A stretch of 64,000 bases of DNA from IMG/VR virus record IMGVR_UViG_3300020474_000001, positions 124,001 through 188,000 of that record, one strand, 5' to 3'. Both the position numbers and the translations under genes were made by a program. The notes under the pieces were generated by a model, which was not told the origin of the DNA, did not search any database, and saw nothing but the letters and a program-made list of their open reading frames with translations. Shown in pieces: positions 1-4,728 of this stretch (within the stretch, counting starts at the first letter, position 1; each line of letters begins with the position of its first letter).

Positions 1-481
1 TACTGTGTCTCAGGTTTTCCTTGTAGTATTCATAAGGGACACCCACAGATAGACGATCTACATCTATACTACCATCTTTAGTAAAGTGGAAAAGATGTTC
101 CCATGTTGGAGATAAAAATCTTTTACTGTTAATTGGTTTTGCATGACCACTAGTCTTACCATTTACATGAATAGACTTGACCCAATTAATATGATTTTGC
201 AATATCCAATCCTGCCTAAGAGCAAGACCCACTTCCATGCCAATCCATGGATCAACATTAGAGTATCCCATATTGACAAATAAATGCCCATCATCTTTAA
301 GAACTCGTTTTCCTTCTCGGAAGATTTCTACCAACCAGTCAAGATACTCCTGACGTGGTTTATTGTCATCATACTTACCGTATTTAATTTTAAGATTATA
401 CGGAGGAGACGTAACGATAGCATCAATACTACTATCCTCCAGTTTTTTCATACCCTCTAAACAATCAAGCAAATAAAGCAT
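1..481 (-). CDS. DNA methyltransferase, beta-class N4-C/N6-A type (3' end runs off window)
   Basis: Manual translation from ATG at 481: MLYLLDCLEGMKKLEDSSIDAIVTSPPYNLKIKYGKY...W; the DC...IDAIVTSPPY catalytic motif IV is typical of beta-class amino-MTases. Not in ORF track because truncated. Confidence 0.85.
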   Translation of the reverse strand, partial: MLYLLDCLEGMKKLEDSSIDAIVTSPPYNLKIKYGKYDDNKPRQEYLDWLVEIFREGKRVLKDDGHLFVNMGYSNVDPWIGMEVGLALRQDWILQNHINWVKSIHVNGKTSGHAKPINSKRFLSPTWEHLFHFTKDGSIDVDRLSVGVPYEYYKENLRHS

Positions 482-902
482 CACGATCTTTGAATGGAAT
501 GGAACCTTTGACGTATTTGGTGAGATCAGATCCGCGTTTGAATACAACGCTAACCTTAGGAAATTCAACAACGTCACAAAAAATATAAATCATGCCAGTA
601 GCATGTTCCCAAAGTTTTTCTTCATCCACATATCGACCAGCACCTTGCATCACACTAGGAGAGAACTTAGAACCACCCTTAGTAAAACACTTAGCATCAA
701 ACAACTCTTTCATGTATTTGTAACGATGATCATACCCCCTACCATCTTCAAAGACAAGACCTTCAAACCACTCTTCAAGTTGCAATTCAAGAAACCTAGA
801 TGCACAGCGACCATCAGTGAACAATCTATTCACACGTTCTTGAGATAAAGTGCCAAAAGATGCAGGGCACTCAAAATCATATACTTTATTGAGTTGTAGC
901 AT
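465..902 (-). CDS. Small PD-(D/E)XK restriction-endonuclease-like protein
   Basis: Motif E..(RFLE)...GYD-x9-FDAK fits PD-(D/E)XK spacing; overlaps the MTase start by 17 nt. Confidence 0.5.
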   Translation of the reverse strand: MLQLNKVYDFECPASFGTLSQERVNRLFTDGRCASRFLELQLEEWFEGLVFEDGRGYDHRYKYMKELFDAKCFTKGGSKFSPSVMQGAGRYVDEEKLWEHATGMIYIFCDVVEFPKVSVVFKRGSDLTKYVKGSIPFKDRDALFA

Positions 903-925
903 AAATTAAATCTCTTTACAAATTT

Positions 926-964
926 ATTGTAGCAAAAAAAGACCTCCCAGTCAAGGGAGGTCTT
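926..964 (-). promoter_or_regulatory. Intrinsic terminator (downstream of regA) fused with a sigma70-type promoter
   Basis: Hairpin AAGACCTCCC-loop6-GGGAGGTCTT with a T-run on the minus strand; the same bases read TTGACT-17nt-TACAAT. Confidence 0.75.
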
Positions 965-1010
965 CGGGTTTCCGACATTCGTAGAGTCTGCACGAAAGAC
1001 TCAAAAATAT

Positions 1011-1442
1011 TTATACACTTTCTTCCTGAGGTTTGGTTTTTTTCCCAATATTATATTTCTGCTCAAGCACCCAATCTGGTTTGTCTTTATAAGCTAAAAC
1101 TTTAATCTGATTCAAAGGTGCAATGTCAGCGATTGCATCTTCACTTGATACTTGAACAAGACCCCAATCAGAAATAAGTTTAATGATTCTATTACGTCTT
1201 TGCACATCGTTAATAGTAAGGTTTGTATTCTTACCGTCAAGAGCAAACAACTCTTTAAAGTGAACGATAAAATACCTTCCCTGCTTATGAAGGATATGAC
1301 AAGATTGATATAACTTCTTTTCTTTTCTCGAAGCAACACCTATTCTCGTCAAGGTCTCTCTAACTTTCAAAAAGTCATCAGGTTCACTGAGAAAGATTTC
1401 AACCATCTTATCTTGTGACCAATCATATATTGGTTCAGTCAT
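1011..1442 (-). CDS. regA: Translational repressor RegA
   Basis: DFLKVRETLTRIGVASRKEKKLYQSCHILHKQGRYFIVHFKELFALDG signature. Confidence 0.97.
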   Translation of the reverse strand: MTEPIYDWSQDKMVEIFLSEPDDFLKVRETLTRIGVASRKEKKLYQSCHILHKQGRYFIVHFKELFALDGKNTNLTINDVQRRNRIIKLISDWGLVQVSSEDAIADIAPLNQIKVLAYKDKPDWVLEQKYNIGKKTKPQEESV

Positions 1443-1822
1443 TTCATTCCTCCAATTTCAAGTTTTTTCTTTATATAACTAAGTTGTTCTTTGGTGAGGA
1501 TCTTCAACGCTTGAAATGCTTTCTCATTACTATAACCATAGTATTCTTTTACACATTCTAAGTCTTGAATGGAATCCTTTCGGATCCAAGGAGAGAATCT
1601 CTTCCTTTTCCTCAAACTATTTAGATAAAAAGAATATTGCATATCTTTCTGTAAAAATGAATACTTATTCATTTCATTGGCAAACATGACACAATCAATG
1701 TGGCCAGACAAACAACGATTAACGATATATGGAGGGTAAGAGCTAATGTTTTCACTTAAGTCAGTTTTCGTAAAATTGATCGATTGTAACCAGTCTTTCA
1801 GTTCTGGATTTATTTGGTTCAT
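1439..1822 (-). CDS. g62: Clamp loader small subunit gp62
   Basis: ELKDWLQSIN..., YPPYIVNRCLS, RKRKRFSPW, KEYYGYSNEKA; start at 1822 preferred over 1876; position just upstream of regA. Confidence 0.92.
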   Translation of the reverse strand: MNQINPELKDWLQSINFTKTDLSENISSYPPYIVNRCLSGHIDCVMFANEMNKYSFLQKDMQYSFYLNSLRKRKRFSPWIRKDSIQDLECVKEYYGYSNEKAFQALKILTKEQLSYIKKKLEIGGMK

Positions 1823-2687
1823 AGTTAAAAAGTAGAAGTTCTTTACGTTCTTTTTGATCTCGCATATATTCTCCAACAGACCTCATTGTATATGTGAGGT
1901 CGAACTCTCCTGTTTTGTATCCTTTAAATCGTTCTTTAATAAGTTGAGACGAATTGTAAGAAATAAGTTGAGGACCAGCAGAGCTAGAGCAAGAGGAAGC
2001 AAAATCATCGTGGTTGAACCCGCTATGCATACCCCCTCGTTTCCCATATAAATTAGATCCAATTTCGTAGGGTGGGTCAAGGTAGGTAAAGGAGTCATTG
2101 TTGTCAATGAGTAGTTGTTCATAACTAAGATTGGTAATTTTCCAATTGACAATTAATTTTGAATATTCTCTAATTTTCTCAATTCCTCGCATTGAGAAGT
2201 TGGAGACACTTGCTTGTTTGCTGAACGAGGAGGACTCAGTGAGACCAGAAAAAGAGCACTTGTTAATAATGTAGAAAGCACAAGCGCGATGTATATTGGA
2301 TACGGTAAGGTCATTTACCAACTCCTTCGATTTCAAAAATAAACTCTTTGCTGGAATTTCATAACCATTTTCTTGTGGTCCATAAACTGGATCTGGATGA
2401 GAAGATTTCTGAGACCTTAGTTCCTCATAAAGATCATCTCCATTTTCTTTAAGAACTACCCAAAAATTATATAAAGGTTCATATAAATCATTTACCCATA
2501 CTTTTATGTCTGGGTATTTCTGAGTAACGTATATAGCTACACTTCCACCACCCAAAAAAGGTTCTCGATACTCATCATAGTCACTAAGATCCGGAAAGAA
2601 AGGATCCATTTTCTTACAAGCACGAGACTTCCCTCCAGGATAGCGGAGAGGAGTTTTCAAAGAACTTGTAGTCATATCAATCATCAA
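1761..2687 (-). CDS. dam: Dam-like N6-adenine DNA methyltransferase (D12 class)
   Basis: LRYPGGKSR, EPFLGGGSV (motif I), YLDPPY (motif IV). Confidence 0.9.
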   Translation of the reverse strand: MMIDMTTSSLKTPLRYPGGKSRACKKMDPFFPDLSDYDEYREPFLGGGSVAIYVTQKYPDIKVWVNDLYEPLYNFWVVLKENGDDLYEELRSQKSSHPDPVYGPQENGYEIPAKSLFLKSKELVNDLTVSNIHRACAFYIINKCSFSGLTESSSFSKQASVSNFSMRGIEKIREYSKLIVNWKITNLSYEQLLIDNNDSFTYLDPPYEIGSNLYGKRGGMHSGFNHDDFASSCSSSAGPQLISYNSSQLIKERFKGYKTGEFDLTYTMRSVGEYMRDQKERKELLLFNYEPNKSRTERLVTIDQFYEN

Positions 2688-3208
2688 ATAGAATTTATAA
2701 AAGATAAATCAAAATCATCAGATTCTGCAAAATAGTCTCTAGGTTCTTCTCTTCCTTCAATTAAATTGTAACCAGTAAGAAAGAAATCAGAAGGTTCGGG
2801 ATTAGCACTTGCAGTCATCACAGCACCAGTATCTTTAAAATTATAAAGTTGTGATGATGGAATGCAACACGCTTTCCCTTTTTTCACATCAGCAATAATG
2901 AAATAATCAGCAAGTTTGTCATCATGGTCTCCAGCAGAACGGCGATTTTTGACGATCAAAGACCTAACAGCAATTTGCGATTTATTCTTAAACTGCGTAA
3001 CCTTAGATTCATAAGTTGTCCCGTTTGGACCAATGAGATCAACTCCTGGAAGATTTACTCTAGTTAGCAGTCCATTACTGTAAACATCGAGTGCTTTCTC
3101 AACCAACTCCCCTGCTTTAGGATACCTGAGGTTGTTCTGAGTATAACCACCAATTGTTCTTAAAAGTTTAGAAAAACGATTAAGGTCAAAAGATTCAAAA
3201 TCAATCAT
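2684..3208 (-). CDS. PD-(D/E)XK nuclease-like protein
   Basis: GELVEKAL...PGVD-x8-YESK pattern; 4-nt overlap with dam. Confidence 0.5.
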   Translation of the reverse strand: MIDFESFDLNRFSKLLRTIGGYTQNNLRYPKAGELVEKALDVYSNGLLTRVNLPGVDLIGPNGTTYESKVTQFKNKSQIAVRSLIVKNRRSAGDHDDKLADYFIIADVKKGKACCIPSSQLYNFKDTGAVMTASANPEPSDFFLTGYNLIEGREEPRDYFAESDDFDLSFINSI

Positions 3209-3223
3209 AATAAAAAATAATAA

Positions 3224-3469
3224 TTAATGAAACTGAACAGCACATGTATTAGATGATTCTACTACTTTTGAAAGTTGAGAACCAATGTAGAATTGCCCCG
3301 CCACCACTGAGATTATTGCGATACCCCAGAAAACGTTGTGTTTTTTTAACTTATAATGTGACTCTTCTATTATACACTGTTTTTTCTTGATTGCATCCAG
3401 TTCCCTATGAATATCTCGATGATGAAATCTTAGAGACTTGTCAATCAATTTAGAAATACGATTTTTCAT
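3224..3469 (-). CDS. Hypothetical protein with one predicted TM helix
   Basis: ORF track; hydrophobic VFWGIAIISVVAGQFYIG; in-operon spacing. Confidence 0.6.
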   Translation of the reverse strand: MKNRISKLIDKSLRFHHRDIHRELDAIKKKQCIIEESHYKLKKHNVFWGIAIISVVAGQFYIGSQLSKVVESSNTCAVQFH

Positions 3470-3474
3470 AGTAG

Positions 3475-3648
3475 TTAATCAACTCTGTCAAATCCCTCGA
3501 TCATATTTACAGGGACACTGTATTTATCGGCAATACGATACCAATGAGTTCCTTCTCCTTCACCAATATACTTGATTTCAGTTTCAGGAATGTTATGCTC
3601 TCGCATTGCTGCTTGAATTTTTAGATGCATCAAGTCGTCTTTGTTCAT
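3475..3648 (-). CDS. Small hypothetical cyanophage protein
   Basis: MNKDDLMHLKIQAAMREHNIPE...; start at 3648 follows stop of preceding small ORF. Confidence 0.65.
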   Translation of the reverse strand: MNKDDLMHLKIQAAMREHNIPETEIKYIGEGEGTHWYRIADKYSVPVNMIEGFDRVD

Positions 3649-3649
3649 G

Positions 3650-3784
3650 TTAAAAAGTCCACCCTTTGAGAATTGAGACAATGTTTAAGTAAGCCCAGGC
3701 AGTAAATACCTGGGGGACTATGAAGGCAATCATAGCCACGATCCAGAACCAGTAGTAATAGTTTTCTTTGTTTTGTGTTCTCAT
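3650..3784 (-). CDS. 44-aa membrane peptide (not in ORF track)
   Basis: Manual translation MRTQNKENYYYWFWIVAMIAFIVPQVFTAWAYLNIVSILKGGLF; 4-nt overlap with the g44 stop. Confidence 0.6.
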   Translation of the reverse strand: MRTQNKENYYYWFWIVAMIAFIVPQVFTAWAYLNIVSILKGWTF

Positions 3785-4728
3785 TTGAATTCACACTCCA
3801 CCATAATTTCAGTTAAACAAGCAAGCATATTTATTTCTTGATCCGCCACGAACGCCATCTGATACTGATACTTAGCAATAATAAGGACAGCAGAAGGAAT
3901 GCTATTCGGAACCAAGGAAATATTAAGAGCATCGTAAATACGACGCAAAAGTAAATTAGTATCATTGTCCAGGTTATTGACAACCCACTTACGGCACTCA
4001 CCGTAATCCTTGTTTTTAAGTTTCTTAACCAGTTCATCTGCATTTACATCACTGAACGTTGCAAGAATTCCCGTATCAATCTTACCAGAAGAAGAGTATC
4101 GTTGACATTCGTTGAGGACTCTTCTCCAGTCGGGGAAGTGCTTGTTGATGAGTTCATAGATGACTTTTGTGTCATATTCGACTCGCTCTGCATTAAGTAT
4201 TTCTTGAATTCGTTTGGAGAAGGACACAGCGATTGCTGGTTTTTGTTTTCCGCCAATTCCGAATTCAACCACAGCGCAACGGGAATGAAGTGGTTCGATG
4301 ATTTTGTTTTTGAAGTTGCAGGTGAGGATGAACCTGCAGTTGCCAGAAAACTCCTCTGTAAACGCCCTAAGTAAGAGTTGTACGTCGTTTGTTGTGTTAT
4401 CCGCCTCATCGATGATGATGACTTTGTGTCGAGCATCTGACGAAAGCGATACAGTGGAAGCGAAATTTTTTGCAGTATTTCTGACCGTATCAAGGAAGCG
4501 TCCCTCATCGGATCCGTTAATGACATAATAATCTGCTCCTAATTCATGACATAGTGCTTTTGCTACTGTTGTTTTTCCACATCCAGCAGGTCCAGAAAGG
4601 AGAAGATTTGGTACTTCTCCTTTACTTAAGAATCCCCGAAAGGTTTTTTTGATATCCTCTGGAAGGATGCATTCTTCAATTGTTTTGGGACGATACTTCT
4701 CGACCCAAAGAAACTCATCACGACTCAT
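3781..4728 (-). CDS. g44: Clamp loader large subunit gp44
   Basis: FLWVEKYRP, Walker A GPAGCGKTT, IIIDEAD, SRC motif. Confidence 0.97.
   Translation of the reverse strand: MSRDEFLWVEKYRPKTIEECILPEDIKKTFRGFLSKGEVPNLLLSGPAGCGKTTVAKALCHELGADYYVINGSDEGRFLDTVRNTAKNFASTVSLSSDARHKVIIIDEADNTTNDVQLLLRAFTEEFSGNCRFILTCNFKNKIIEPLHSRCAVVEFGIGGKQKPAIAVSFSKRIQEILNAERVEYDTKVIYELINKHFPDWRRVLNECQRYSSSGKIDTGILATFSDVNADELVKKLKNKDYGECRKWVVNNLDNDTNLLLRRIYDALNISLVPNSIPSAVLIIAKYQYQMAFVADQEINMLACLTEIMVECEFK

What the first reader, a model, noticed from the sequence alone, without database searches (positions are those of the whole stretch)
1..964. Nuclease-methyltransferase pair with its own host-type promoter downstream of regA: candidate phage-encoded R-M system
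Seen in sequence: a TTGACT-17-TACAAT promoter drives a 145-aa ORF with a YD...DAK PD-(D/E)XK pattern, which overlaps a beta-class SPPY methyltransferase. Established: cyanomyovirus MTases are usually orphans, and other genes (often hsp20) commonly follow regA. Inference: a compact Type II-like R-M cassette that could cut host or competitor-phage DNA while protecting the phage genome.
Basis: partly seen in the sequence, partly recalled or inferred. Interest (0 to 1): 0.65.

Follow-up and report, generated by a model that had tools for sequence, protein, structure and literature searches.

The report
Cyanophage restriction-modification gene cassette
A T4-like marine cyanophage carries, right after regA, a small DNA-cutting enzyme gene overlapping a DNA-methylase gene under its own early promoter; this looks like a real Type II restriction-modification cassette, but the same pair is already annotated in a few cultured cyanophages, so it is a new member of a known kind.

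Summary
All features are on the minus strand. A terminator hairpin (965-938) carries TTGACT in its loop and is followed by a T-run and TG-TACAAT. A 145-aa ORF (902-465) follows and overlaps by 17 nt a 278-aa SPPY methyltransferase that starts at 481 and runs 356 bp past the window start.

ORF145 folds confidently (pLDDT 91.6) into a PD-(D/E)XK nuclease closest to PvuII and EcoRV. D58, D/E69 and K71 are conserved, and it models as a symmetric homodimer. It matches a PADLOC Type II REase profile. It is 43% and 33% identical to genes annotated 'R.RsaI endonuclease' in phages Syn19 and ACG-2014j, and both of those overlap a 77-78% identical methylase.

In viral metagenome contigs, relatives at 55% identity or more carry the same overlapping pair, with two exceptions. 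The pair sits in several genome contexts, and both genes are under purifying selection.

Phage Bellamy has regA, one terminator-promoter element, then hsp20. Here the cassette plus a second such element sits between them.

GTAC/m4C specificity is likely but unproven. GTAC depletion is general in cyanomyoviruses. More distant relatives of the nuclease often lack an adjacent methylase, and this is unexplained.

The parts
938..965 (-). Intrinsic terminator hairpin after regA (stem GAAGACCTCCC/GGGAGGTCTT, loop TTGACT) followed by a T-run. It forms the first half of a PeSL-like terminator/promoter composite.
   Evidence: Terminator scan. RNA fold -34.2 kcal/mol, z -4.98. The same architecture occurs in related loci.
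926..954 (-). Sigma-70-type early promoter candidate: TTGACT, 17 nt, TACAAT, with TG extended -10. The -35 lies in the hairpin loop.
   Evidence: 10/12, TG present. A -10-like element lies 20-45 nt upstream of the homologous ATG in most cassette loci. Function not shown.
465..902 (-). ORF145 (R): PvuII/EcoRV-like PD-(D/E)XK Type II restriction endonuclease candidate of the 'R.RsaI'-annotated family. Catalytic candidates are E39, D58, D69 and K71. Predicted homodimer through residues 11-44.
1..481 (-). N-terminal 160 codons of the beta-class SPPY (N4-cytosine type) DNA methyltransferase (M). The full gene is 278 aa at L003:1145-1981(-) and ends 356 bp before the window start. It overlaps R by 17 nt.
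1011..1442 (-). regA translational repressor, the conserved upstream neighbour. It is the last gene before the inserted cassette.
   Evidence: Pfam PF01818 3.4e-43, PHROG 242. Bellamy synteny.

Best explanation
This is a compact Type IIP restriction-modification cassette carried by a lytic T4-like cyanomyovirus.

Shown or directly computed:
- R (ORF145) has the alpha-beta-beta-beta-alpha-beta PD-(D/E)XK core, with conserved E39, D58, D/E69 and K71.
- R resembles PvuII and EcoRV most, and is predicted to form a symmetric homodimer through its N-terminal helices.
- M is a beta-class methyltransferase with the SPPY motif typical of N4-cytosine enzymes.
- The two genes overlap by 17 nt. They sit behind a terminator-promoter composite, and a second such composite follows M.
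- The pair recurs in many marine T4-like phage contigs, in different genomic places, under purifying selection.

Inferred mechanism:
1. Host RNA polymerase reads the sigma-70-type promoter early after injection.
2. R and M are made from one mRNA by translational coupling.
3. The incoming phage DNA is already methylated from the previous cycle, and newly replicated DNA is hemimethylated. R therefore spares the phage.
4. R cuts the unmethylated host chromosome and any co-infecting phage that lacks the mark. This helps host shut-off, nucleotide recycling and exclusion of competitors.
5. M additionally shields the phage from host enzymes of the same specificity.

The site is probably GTAC with GTA(m4C) protection, as for RsaI. 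That rests on database annotation of homologues.

The cassette most likely entered between regA and hsp20 by recombination at terminator-promoter (PeSL-like) elements.
For: - Fold: pLDDT 91.6. Foldseek top hits are PvuII (prob 0.98, TM 0.45-0.49), NlaIV, ThaI, DpnI and NaeI. VIA gives Z 7.4-7.0 for Eco15I-N/NhoI, I-Ssp6803I and PvuII, and 6.2 for EcoRV.
- Motif conservation.
- PADLOC REase_II PDLC03550: hit by 22 of 22 family members, best E 1.9e-16.
- Nearest Pfam-bearing ESM-Atlas cluster: Endonuc-PvuII.
- Homodimer model: score 0.83 against best control 0.01; the mark was reached by 20 of 30 solved homodimers and 1 of 23 monomers; the three runs share at least 96% of contacts; partner pLDDT 90; interface residues 11-44.
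- Homologues annotated R.RsaI have an overlapping 77-78% identical M in Syn19 and ACG-2014j.
- In IMG/VR loci, R at 55% identity or more has the overlapping M directly downstream. The exceptions are L021, where a 354-aa ORF intervenes, and L043, where the contig ends. The pair occurs after regA, before gp44 and elsewhere.
- dN/dS: R 0.07-0.16, M 0.05-0.11.
- M: Pfam N6_N4_Mtase; PADLOC MTase_II 1.5e-86 over the full length; best PDB relatives are cytosine-N4 methyltransferases, E 7e-25.
- M.RsaI makes GTA(m4C) (PMC3287169, PMC6256690).
- Bellamy has regA, one PeSL-like element, then hsp20, with no cassette. Here two such elements flank R-M.
- PeSL-mediated module shuffling is described for T4-like phages (PMC2839356, PMC4122927).
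Against: - No enzymatic, methylome or transcript evidence exists. Four metatranscriptome contig sets covered neighbouring genes of relatives but nothing at window 1-965 (contigs cannot show absence).
- No Pfam, PHROG or NCBIfam family matches R. Structural Z scores are below 8, a range the tool calls middling.
- Homology to authentic R.RsaI could not be tested, because no R.RsaI sequence was available by reference. M.RsaI appears to be about 400 aa by plasmid-size arithmetic, against 278 aa here.
- GTAC depletion (O/E 0.51) is no stronger than in relatives lacking the cassette (0.38-0.41), so it does not pin down the specificity.
- Many more distant R homologues lack an adjacent methylase. Members of the family can therefore exist outside a classical pair.
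Confidence: 0.8

Rival explanations
1. The cassette is mainly a selfish mobile element. In mixed infections, R cuts cassette-free relatives, and recombinational repair copies the cassette or its flanks into them. This resembles the marker exclusion caused by T4 Seg/Mob homing endonucleases. Any benefit to the phage would be secondary. This overlaps with the best explanation and differs only in which selective force keeps the cassette.
For: The same R-M pair occurs in several unrelated genomic contexts and is patchy among close relatives. One ACG-2014j isolate has it and the other lacks it. It is flanked by recombinogenic PeSL-like elements. I-Ssp6803I, a PD-(D/E)XK homing endonuclease, is among the best structural matches (Z 7.3).
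Against: A 4-bp cutter with hundreds of sites does not target one homing locus. Strong purifying selection on both genes over dS of about 1 or more fits a function useful to the carrier.
Confidence: 0.3
2. Only M matters, as anti-restriction methylation against host enzymes. ORF145 is not a restriction enzyme but another PD-(D/E)XK nuclease, for example a recombination or junction-resolving enzyme such as Hjc, or a host-DNA nuclease protected against by other means. It merely sits next to M.
For: Hjc resolvases match with Z about 6. Distant R homologues often stand without an adjacent methylase, once next to a Mom-family gene. Cyanophage methylases are commonly orphans (PMC12801897).
Against: The 17-nt overlap with M is kept in nearly all relatives at 55% identity or more. 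The close M clade is never found without R in cultured phages. R matches a Type II REase profile. The PvuII-like N-terminal dimerisation module passed the complex test.
Confidence: 0.1
3. The ORF145 frame or the promoter is a chance feature and not a real expressed gene.
For: The count of promoter-like sites in the region does not exceed shuffles. No RNA contigs cover the cassette.
Against: More than 100 protein relatives were found by word search and 638 representative clusters by profile search. dN/dS is about 0.1. The fold is confident. A comparable promoter-like element recurs upstream of the homologous gene in most related loci.
Confidence: 0.02

Closest known systems
Syn19_153/154 and ACG-2014j (isolate Syn7803US23) gp047/048: 'R.RsaI endonuclease' plus DNA methyltransferase in cultured Synechococcus myoviruses
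   Same: R is homologous (43% and 33% identity over 88% of the query). M is 77-78% identical. Both have R first, with M overlapping the R stop, in a T4-like cyanophage.
   Different: The genomic position differs. Syn19 has the pair two genes upstream of hsp20 but not after regA. ACG-2014j has it after 2OG-Fe(II) oxygenase genes. Their R proteins are 167-171 aa against 145 aa here. As far as the searched literature shows, none has been tested experimentally.
RsaI restriction-modification system of Rhodobacter blasticus 28/5 (GT^AC; M.RsaI makes GTA(m4C))
   Same: Homologues of R are annotated as R.RsaI. M here has the SPPY motif of N4-cytosine enzymes, the same chemistry as M.RsaI.
   Different: Direct sequence comparison with R.RsaI or M.RsaI could not be made. 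M.RsaI appears much longer, about 400 aa by plasmid-size arithmetic. The host is a bacterium, not a lytic phage. The recognition site here is untested.
PvuII system (R.PvuII, 157-aa blunt-cutting homodimer; M.PvuII, beta-class m4C methylase)
   Same: PvuII is among the best structural matches (Foldseek prob 0.98; VIA Z 7.2, rmsd 3.6 over 104 residues). The size is similar. The acidic/acidic/lysine triad falls at almost the same residue numbers: D58/D69/K71 here, D58/E68/K70 in PvuII from my own knowledge. Dimerisation is through the N-terminal helices. The partner is an m4C-type beta methylase.
   Different: There is no sequence-family membership: Pfam Endonuc-PvuII gives no hit at E up to 5 for any of 22 members. 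There is no C (controller) gene. A different recognition site is expected.
Chlorovirus-encoded R-M systems (for example CviQI G^TAC with M.CviQI GT(m6A)C; PBCV-1 enzymes that degrade host DNA)
   Same: A lytic virus of a photosynthetic microbe carries complete Type II R-M pairs, one of them GTAC-specific. Their accepted role (own knowledge) is early degradation of host DNA while viral DNA is methylated. M.CviQI specificity is from PMC3287169.
   Different: The host is eukaryotic and the virus a giant virus. M.CviQI is an adenine methylase. No sequence relationship was shown here.
PeSL (promoter-early stem-loop) terminator/promoter cassettes of T4-like phages (Arbiol 2010, Comeau 2014)
   Same: A stem-loop plus a near-consensus sigma-70 early promoter flanks variable gene modules. 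Here one copy precedes R and one precedes hsp20, whereas Bellamy has a single copy.
   Different: PeSLs were described in coliphages, a Vibrio phage and relatives. The 2014 paper does not mention cyanophages. Here the -35 lies inside the loop. Recombination at these elements is inferred, not shown.

Membership tests
Type II (IIP) restriction-modification system | Endonuclease with a nuclease catalytic core (here PD-(D/E)XK: alpha-beta-beta-beta-alpha-beta with acidic, acidic and Lys residues) | tested here: met
   The AF2 model has pLDDT 91.6, with H31-45, E49-51, E59-61, E67-74, H94-102 and E105-110. Best structural matches are all PD-(D/E)XK nucleases. D58, D/E69 and K71 are conserved. This is predicted structure only.
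Type II (IIP) restriction-modification system | Separate, adjacent DNA methyltransferase with SAM-binding and catalytic motifs | tested here: met
   PF01555 3.5e-24. The full gene has SPPY (motif IV) near the N-terminus and DPFMGTGST (motif I) near the C-terminus, which is the beta-class order. PADLOC MTase_II 1.5e-86. It overlaps R by 17 nt.
Type II (IIP) restriction-modification system | Endonuclease acts as a homodimer on a palindromic site | tested here: inconclusive
   The homodimer model scored 0.83 against a best control of 0.01. The mark was reached by 20 of 30 solved homodimers and 1 of 23 monomers. The runs agree in at least 96% of contacts and partner pLDDT is 90. A model supports binding but does not show it. 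The site is unknown.
Type II (IIP) restriction-modification system | R and M recognise the same sequence, and methylation blocks cleavage | not testable with these tools
   Needs enzyme assays or a methylome.
RsaI family (GTAC) | Sequence homology to R.RsaI of R. blasticus 28/5 | tested here: inconclusive
   The evidence is only indirect: homologues are annotated 'R.RsaI endonuclease' in GenBank, and there is a REBASE-derived PADLOC REase_II profile hit. The scan of bacterial genomes found only two MAG contigs. One of them (L084) looks like a phage contig. No R.RsaI sequence was available by reference.
RsaI family (GTAC) | Cognate methylase makes N4-methylcytosine (GTA(m4C)) | tested here: inconclusive
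   The SPPY motif and the best PDB relatives, 'DNA cytosine-N4 methyltransferase' at 7e-25, fit m4C. The base and the site were not measured. M.RsaI chemistry is from PMC3287169 and PMC6256690.
RsaI family (GTAC) | GTAC recognition | tested here: inconclusive
   GTAC O/E is 0.51 in this genome, but 0.38-0.41 in relatives without the cassette. Pooled loci with solitary R homologues show the strongest depletion (0.22, rank 1 of 16), but no matched control exists.
Pfam Endonuc-PvuII (PF09225) | Match to the family HMM | tested here: not met
   No hit at E up to 5 for any of 22 members. The PDB profile search found nothing. The likeness is structural only.
PeSL terminator/early-promoter cassette | Stem-loop joined to a sigma-70-like early promoter, flanking variable modules that differ between close relatives | tested here: met
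   Composites lie at window 965-926 and at G000 about 123,612, both on the minus strand. Bellamy has one copy and no cassette. Promoter activity and recombination were not tested.

The most novel reading that the evidence does not exclude
ORF145 belongs to a large, essentially phage-borne nuclease family: 638 representative clusters at 50% identity, and no convincing bacterial locus found by the pattern scan. Marine T4-like phages would use this family as an offensive weapon against host and rival-phage DNA. Self-protection would be interchangeable: an overlapping m4C methylase in this clade, but in other clades a distant methylase, a Mom-type adenine modification (L078), or strong avoidance of the site (GTAC O/E 0.22). 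That would make it a modular 'nuclease plus any self-mark' system rather than a classical, strictly paired R-M system.
Probability: 0.2. Interest if true: 0.7.

Novelty: new member of a known kind. Interest (0 to 1): 0.42.

Why it matters
T4 destroys host DNA with EndoII and EndoIV and protects itself with hydroxymethylcytosine. Cyanomyoviruses lack that chemistry, and how some of them shut off and recycle the host genome is not settled.

A complete, early-promoter-driven R-M cassette offers a directly testable mechanism: cut the unmethylated host and rival-phage DNA while sparing the pre-methylated phage genome.

The cassette is found in cultured phages (Syn19, Syn2, one ACG-2014j isolate) and in many uncultured marine phage contigs. 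Natural pairs with and without it exist, such as the two ACG-2014j isolates, so experiments are feasible.

The cassette also gives a clean example outside the enterobacterial and vibrio phages of a module bounded by terminator-promoter elements. It supports that model of T4-like genome plasticity.

The pair itself is already annotated in GenBank, so the finding extends known biology rather than opening a new category.

Tried and rejected
- Pfam, PHROGs and NCBIfam gave nothing for ORF145. The PDB profile search gave only noise.
- tblastn against plasmids found no match.
- The scan of bacterial genomes found two MAG contigs. L084 has the gene order of phage loci L068/L071, so it is not evidence of a bacterial home.
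- The profile search of 1.84 billion representatives found 638 clusters but no named member. Ten sampled clusters carry no informative name.
- Longer proteins containing the domain (421-478 aa) have no Pfam domain in the rest, so they are not demonstrable R-M fusions.
- PADLOC REase profile PDLC03550 does not ring in any of 14 control genomes, including M. jannaschii, which has a GTAC system. That shortcut to specificity failed.
- I tried GTAC depletion as a test of specificity. It is rejected as evidence, because cassette-free relatives are equally depleted.
- Literature searches for RsaI with cyanophage, Syn19 with restriction, and cyanophage R-M found no study of this pair.
- RNA evidence: contigs from four marine metatranscriptomes lie on regA, gp62, Dam and ORF174 of relatives, but none on 1-965. 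This gives neither support nor refutation.
- ORF174 with Dam as a second R-M pair: the AF2 model failed (pLDDT 39.6), and the adjacency is not conserved. It is not claimed.
- M.RsaI and R.RsaI sequences could be reached only as supplementary text without a reference, so the direct comparison was left out.

Full report
**Where the window lies and gene order.** The window is bases 124,001-188,000 of a 207,655-bp virus record. The nearest cultured relatives over regA-gp62 are Synechococcus myoviruses such as Bellamy, at about 76% DNA identity. All genes at window 1-4728 are on the minus strand. Read in the direction of transcription, they are:
- gp44 clamp loader (4728-3781) and small ORFs;
- ORF174 (3208-2684);
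- a Dam-like D12 methyltransferase (2687-1761);
- gp62 (1822-1439);
- regA (1442-1011);
- the finding;
- hsp20, just outside the window.

**Checking the observation.** The promoter-like site is TTGACT (954-949), 17 nt, TACAAT (931-926), with TG before the -10. It is the best site in the first 5 kb (10 of 12). The number of such sites there (16) equals the shuffled expectation (15.4), so the match alone proves nothing.

The context is more telling. The -35 hexamer is the loop of an 11-bp G+C-rich hairpin (965-938) that is followed by a T-run. This is an intrinsic terminator for regA fused to a promoter (fold z-score -5.0).

ORF145 (902-465) cannot be extended upstream. The methyltransferase starts at ATG 481, 17 nt before the ORF145 stop codon ends. 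SPPY is encoded at 409-398. Only 160 of its 278 codons are in the window, and the gene ends 356 bp before the window start (L003:1145-1981).

**What ORF145 is.** Pfam, PHROGs and NCBIfam are silent. PADLOC's Type II REase profile PDLC03550 matches at E 6.8e-7. It matches all 22 diverse family members, with a best E of 1.9e-16.

tblastn against 50,697 phage records finds five records representing three phages: Syn19, Syn2 and ACG-2014j isolate Syn7803US23. Identity is 43% and 33%. The gene is annotated 'R.RsaI endonuclease' in Syn19 and ACG-2014j, and in each case it is followed by an overlapping methyltransferase.

An AlphaFold2 model built on 26 homologues is confident (pLDDT 91.6, pTM 0.86). 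It has the order helix 31-45, strands 49-51, 59-61 and 67-74, helix 94-102, strand 105-110. That is the PD-(D/E)XK core, with D58 at the start of the second strand and D69-A-K71 in the third.

Foldseek ranks PvuII first (prob 0.98, E 0.02, TM 0.45-0.49), followed by NlaIV, ThaI, HinP1I, DpnI and NaeI. VIA-align gives:
- Z 7.4 for the Eco15I N-domain;
- Z 7.3 for I-Ssp6803I;
- Z 7.2 for PvuII (rmsd 3.6 over 104 residues);
- Z 6.2 for EcoRV;
- about Z 6 for Hjc.

These Z values are in the range the tool calls middling, but every good match is a PD-(D/E)XK nuclease. The ESM Atlas look-alike search likewise gives Endonuc-PvuII as the nearest Pfam-bearing cluster.

Across 22 members down to 35% identity, D30, G31, R32, S35, D58, K71, T74, G77, S83, G87, R90, D110, F114 and P115 are invariant. 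Position 69 is always D or E, and E39 is nearly invariant.

A two-copy complex prediction passed its controls. The score was 0.83 against a best control of 0.01. That mark was reached by 20 of 30 solved homodimers and 1 of 23 monomers. The runs agree in at least 96% of contacts, and partner pLDDT is 90. The interface is symmetric and made by residues 11-44. From my own knowledge, PvuII uses the same region for dimerisation. The model supports binding but does not show it.

**What the methyltransferase is.**
- It is an N6_N4_Mtase.
- Its motif order is SPPY first and DPFMGTGST near the C-terminus, which is the beta class.
- PADLOC MTase_II PDLC03295 matches at 1.5e-86 over the whole length.
- Its best solved relatives are chains named 'DNA cytosine-N4 methyltransferase' (8s9m, 8s9n; E 7e-25), ahead of adenine enzymes.
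- Close relatives (77-78% identity) exist in cultured phages only in the three phages that also have R. ACG-2014f has a 56% relative without R.

This M clade is therefore not one of the common orphan cyanophage methylases.

**Linkage, mobility and selection.** A scan of IMG/VR found 131 contigs with an R relative, and 80 were kept. In loci with R at 55% identity or more, M follows with the same overlap. There are two exceptions: L021, where a 354-aa ORF intervenes, and L043, where the contig ends. The pair sits after regA in some loci, before gp44 in another, and in unrelated surroundings in many. Pairwise dN/dS against the window copy is 0.07-0.16 for R and 0.05-0.11 for M, at dS of about 0.8-2.

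Upstream of R, most loci show a hairpin, a T-run and a TGnTAnnnT element. Several have TTGAC in the loop, as here.

In this genome, a strict search for such composites finds three strong ones. All are on the minus strand and consecutive: before R, before hsp20, and about 1.8 kb further on.

Bellamy has regA, one such element, then hsp20, and no cassette. Its element aligns with the regA-proximal part of the window's first copy and with the hsp20-proximal part of the second copy. This is the pattern described for PeSL elements, which mediate module gain and loss in T4-like phages (PMC2839356, PMC4122927).

**Specificity.** M.RsaI makes GTA(m4C) (PMC3287169, PMC6256690). The m4C-type motif here fits that. 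I could not compare the proteins with authentic R.RsaI or M.RsaI, because no referenced sequence was available.

GTAC is the second most depleted 4-bp palindrome in this genome: 282 observed against 558 expected, O/E 0.51. It is equally or more depleted in 45-50 kb samples of relatives without the cassette: 0.38 in ACG-2014j Syn7803US103 and 0.41 in Bellamy. The depletion is therefore a general cyanomyovirus trait and not evidence for this enzyme's site. GTAC remains the most likely guess, at roughly even odds.

**Mechanism.** I commit to an orthodox Type IIP system used offensively by a lytic phage.
1. The cassette is transcribed early from the host-type promoter.
2. R and M are translated together from the coupled genes.
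3. The pre-methylated incoming genome and its hemimethylated replication products are spared.
4. The host chromosome and unmarked co-infecting phages are cut.

The gene anatomy, fold, conservation and linkage are shown. Timing, activity, site and biological benefit are inferred. The closest functional analogue is the chlorovirus R-M systems. From my own knowledge, the analogue within T4 is EndoII/EndoIV acting with modified cytosine.

The main rival differs only in emphasis: a selfish element spreading in co-infections. A minor rival holds that R is not a restriction enzyme. It draws on the observation below.

**An unexplained observation.** R relatives at 44-53% identity, in about 35 viral loci and one Logan contig, have no beta-class methylase beside them and no shared downstream partner. 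Their neighbours are T4-like replication genes.

In L078, L079 and L083 the R relative has the same arrangement. In L078 the ORF overlapping the R start was scanned and is a Mom-family DNA-modification gene (PF25680, 5.8e-48). In L092, a 165-aa ORF with weak gamma-methylase hits follows R.

The pooled solitary loci show GTAC O/E 0.22, the most depleted palindrome, but there is no matched control. The records are 25-59% complete, and two of five carry an N6_N4 methylase elsewhere. How these phages spare their own DNA is open.

**RNA evidence.** Six metatranscriptomic runs hold small shares of the stretch. Contigs from four of them lie on regA, gp62, Dam and ORF174 of 90-97% similar relatives. 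None lies on 1-965. Contigs cannot show absence, so this neither supports nor refutes expression.

**Verdict.** This is a real and very probably functional R-M cassette. It is a new member of a kind already annotated in a few cyanophages, placed at a different locus and neatly bounded by terminator-promoter elements. Interest is moderate. It rises if the solitary-nuclease branch turns out to use alternative self-marks.

Noticed in passing
window 2684-3208 (-), overlapping the start of the Dam-like methylase at 1761-2687 (-): ORF174 has invariant D57 and E67-S-K69. Its nearest Pfam-bearing ESM-Atlas clusters are PDDEXK_16, DpnI, PvuII and Bsp6I, so it is probably another PD-(D/E)XK nuclease. 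The AF2 model failed (pLDDT 39.6). Its homologues usually follow a DEAD/ResIII helicase with a 4-bp overlap (S-SM1_072, L095-L102) and are absent next to Dam in related loci. A second R-M pair is therefore not supported.
   Followed up: partly
window 1761-2687 (-) and 1439-1822 (-): A D12-class (Dam-like) methyltransferase sits between gp44 and gp62, as in Bellamy and S-CAM4. Its 3' end overlaps the likely gp62 start by about 62 nt.
   Followed up: partly
L043-L083 (subset), L092: About 35 T4-like phage loci carry a solitary ORF145-family nuclease with no adjacent beta-class methylase and no shared neighbour. Pooled, GTAC is their most depleted palindrome (O/E 0.22).
   Followed up: partly
L078:3163-3978 (+) with R at 3947-4399; L079 and L083 have the same arrangement: A Mom-family DNA-modification gene (PF25680, 5.8e-48) overlaps the start of the nuclease homologue. 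This may be a nuclease paired with a non-methyl self-mark. A 2025 paper states that Mom had not been seen before in cyanophages (PMC12801897).
   Followed up: no
G000 124,940, 123,612 and 121,800 (minus strand); window 965-926 and upstream of the window start: Three consecutive PeSL-like composites (hairpin, T-run, TGnTAnnnT) bound successive gene modules downstream of regA. They are the only strong examples found in the 207-kb genome by a strict pattern.
   Followed up: partly
window ~982-1000 (-): A second hairpin (GAGTCTTTCGTGCAGACTC) lies between the regA stop and the terminator. It is conserved in L014 and, in diverged form, in Bellamy and L007. Its role is unknown. The weak Rfam Phe_leader match at 933-1015 (E 0.078, below gathering) just reflects these hairpins.
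   Followed up: no
whole genome G000; L087-L090: GGCC, GTAC and AGCT (and TGCA or CCGG in some) are strongly under-represented in all cyanomyovirus samples examined, whether or not they carry the cassette. This suggests widespread restriction pressure at these sites.
   Followed up: partly
L099-L102:1-498 and 491-1327: An Endonuclease_7-family ORF overlaps a different 278-aa SPPY N6_N4 methylase. That methylase shares only the conserved motifs with the window's M. It is another nuclease-methylase overlap in marine phage contigs.
   Followed up: no
P0317, P0322, P0345, P0371: Proteins of 421-478 aa contain the ORF145-family domain at one end. The rest has no Pfam match.
   Followed up: partly
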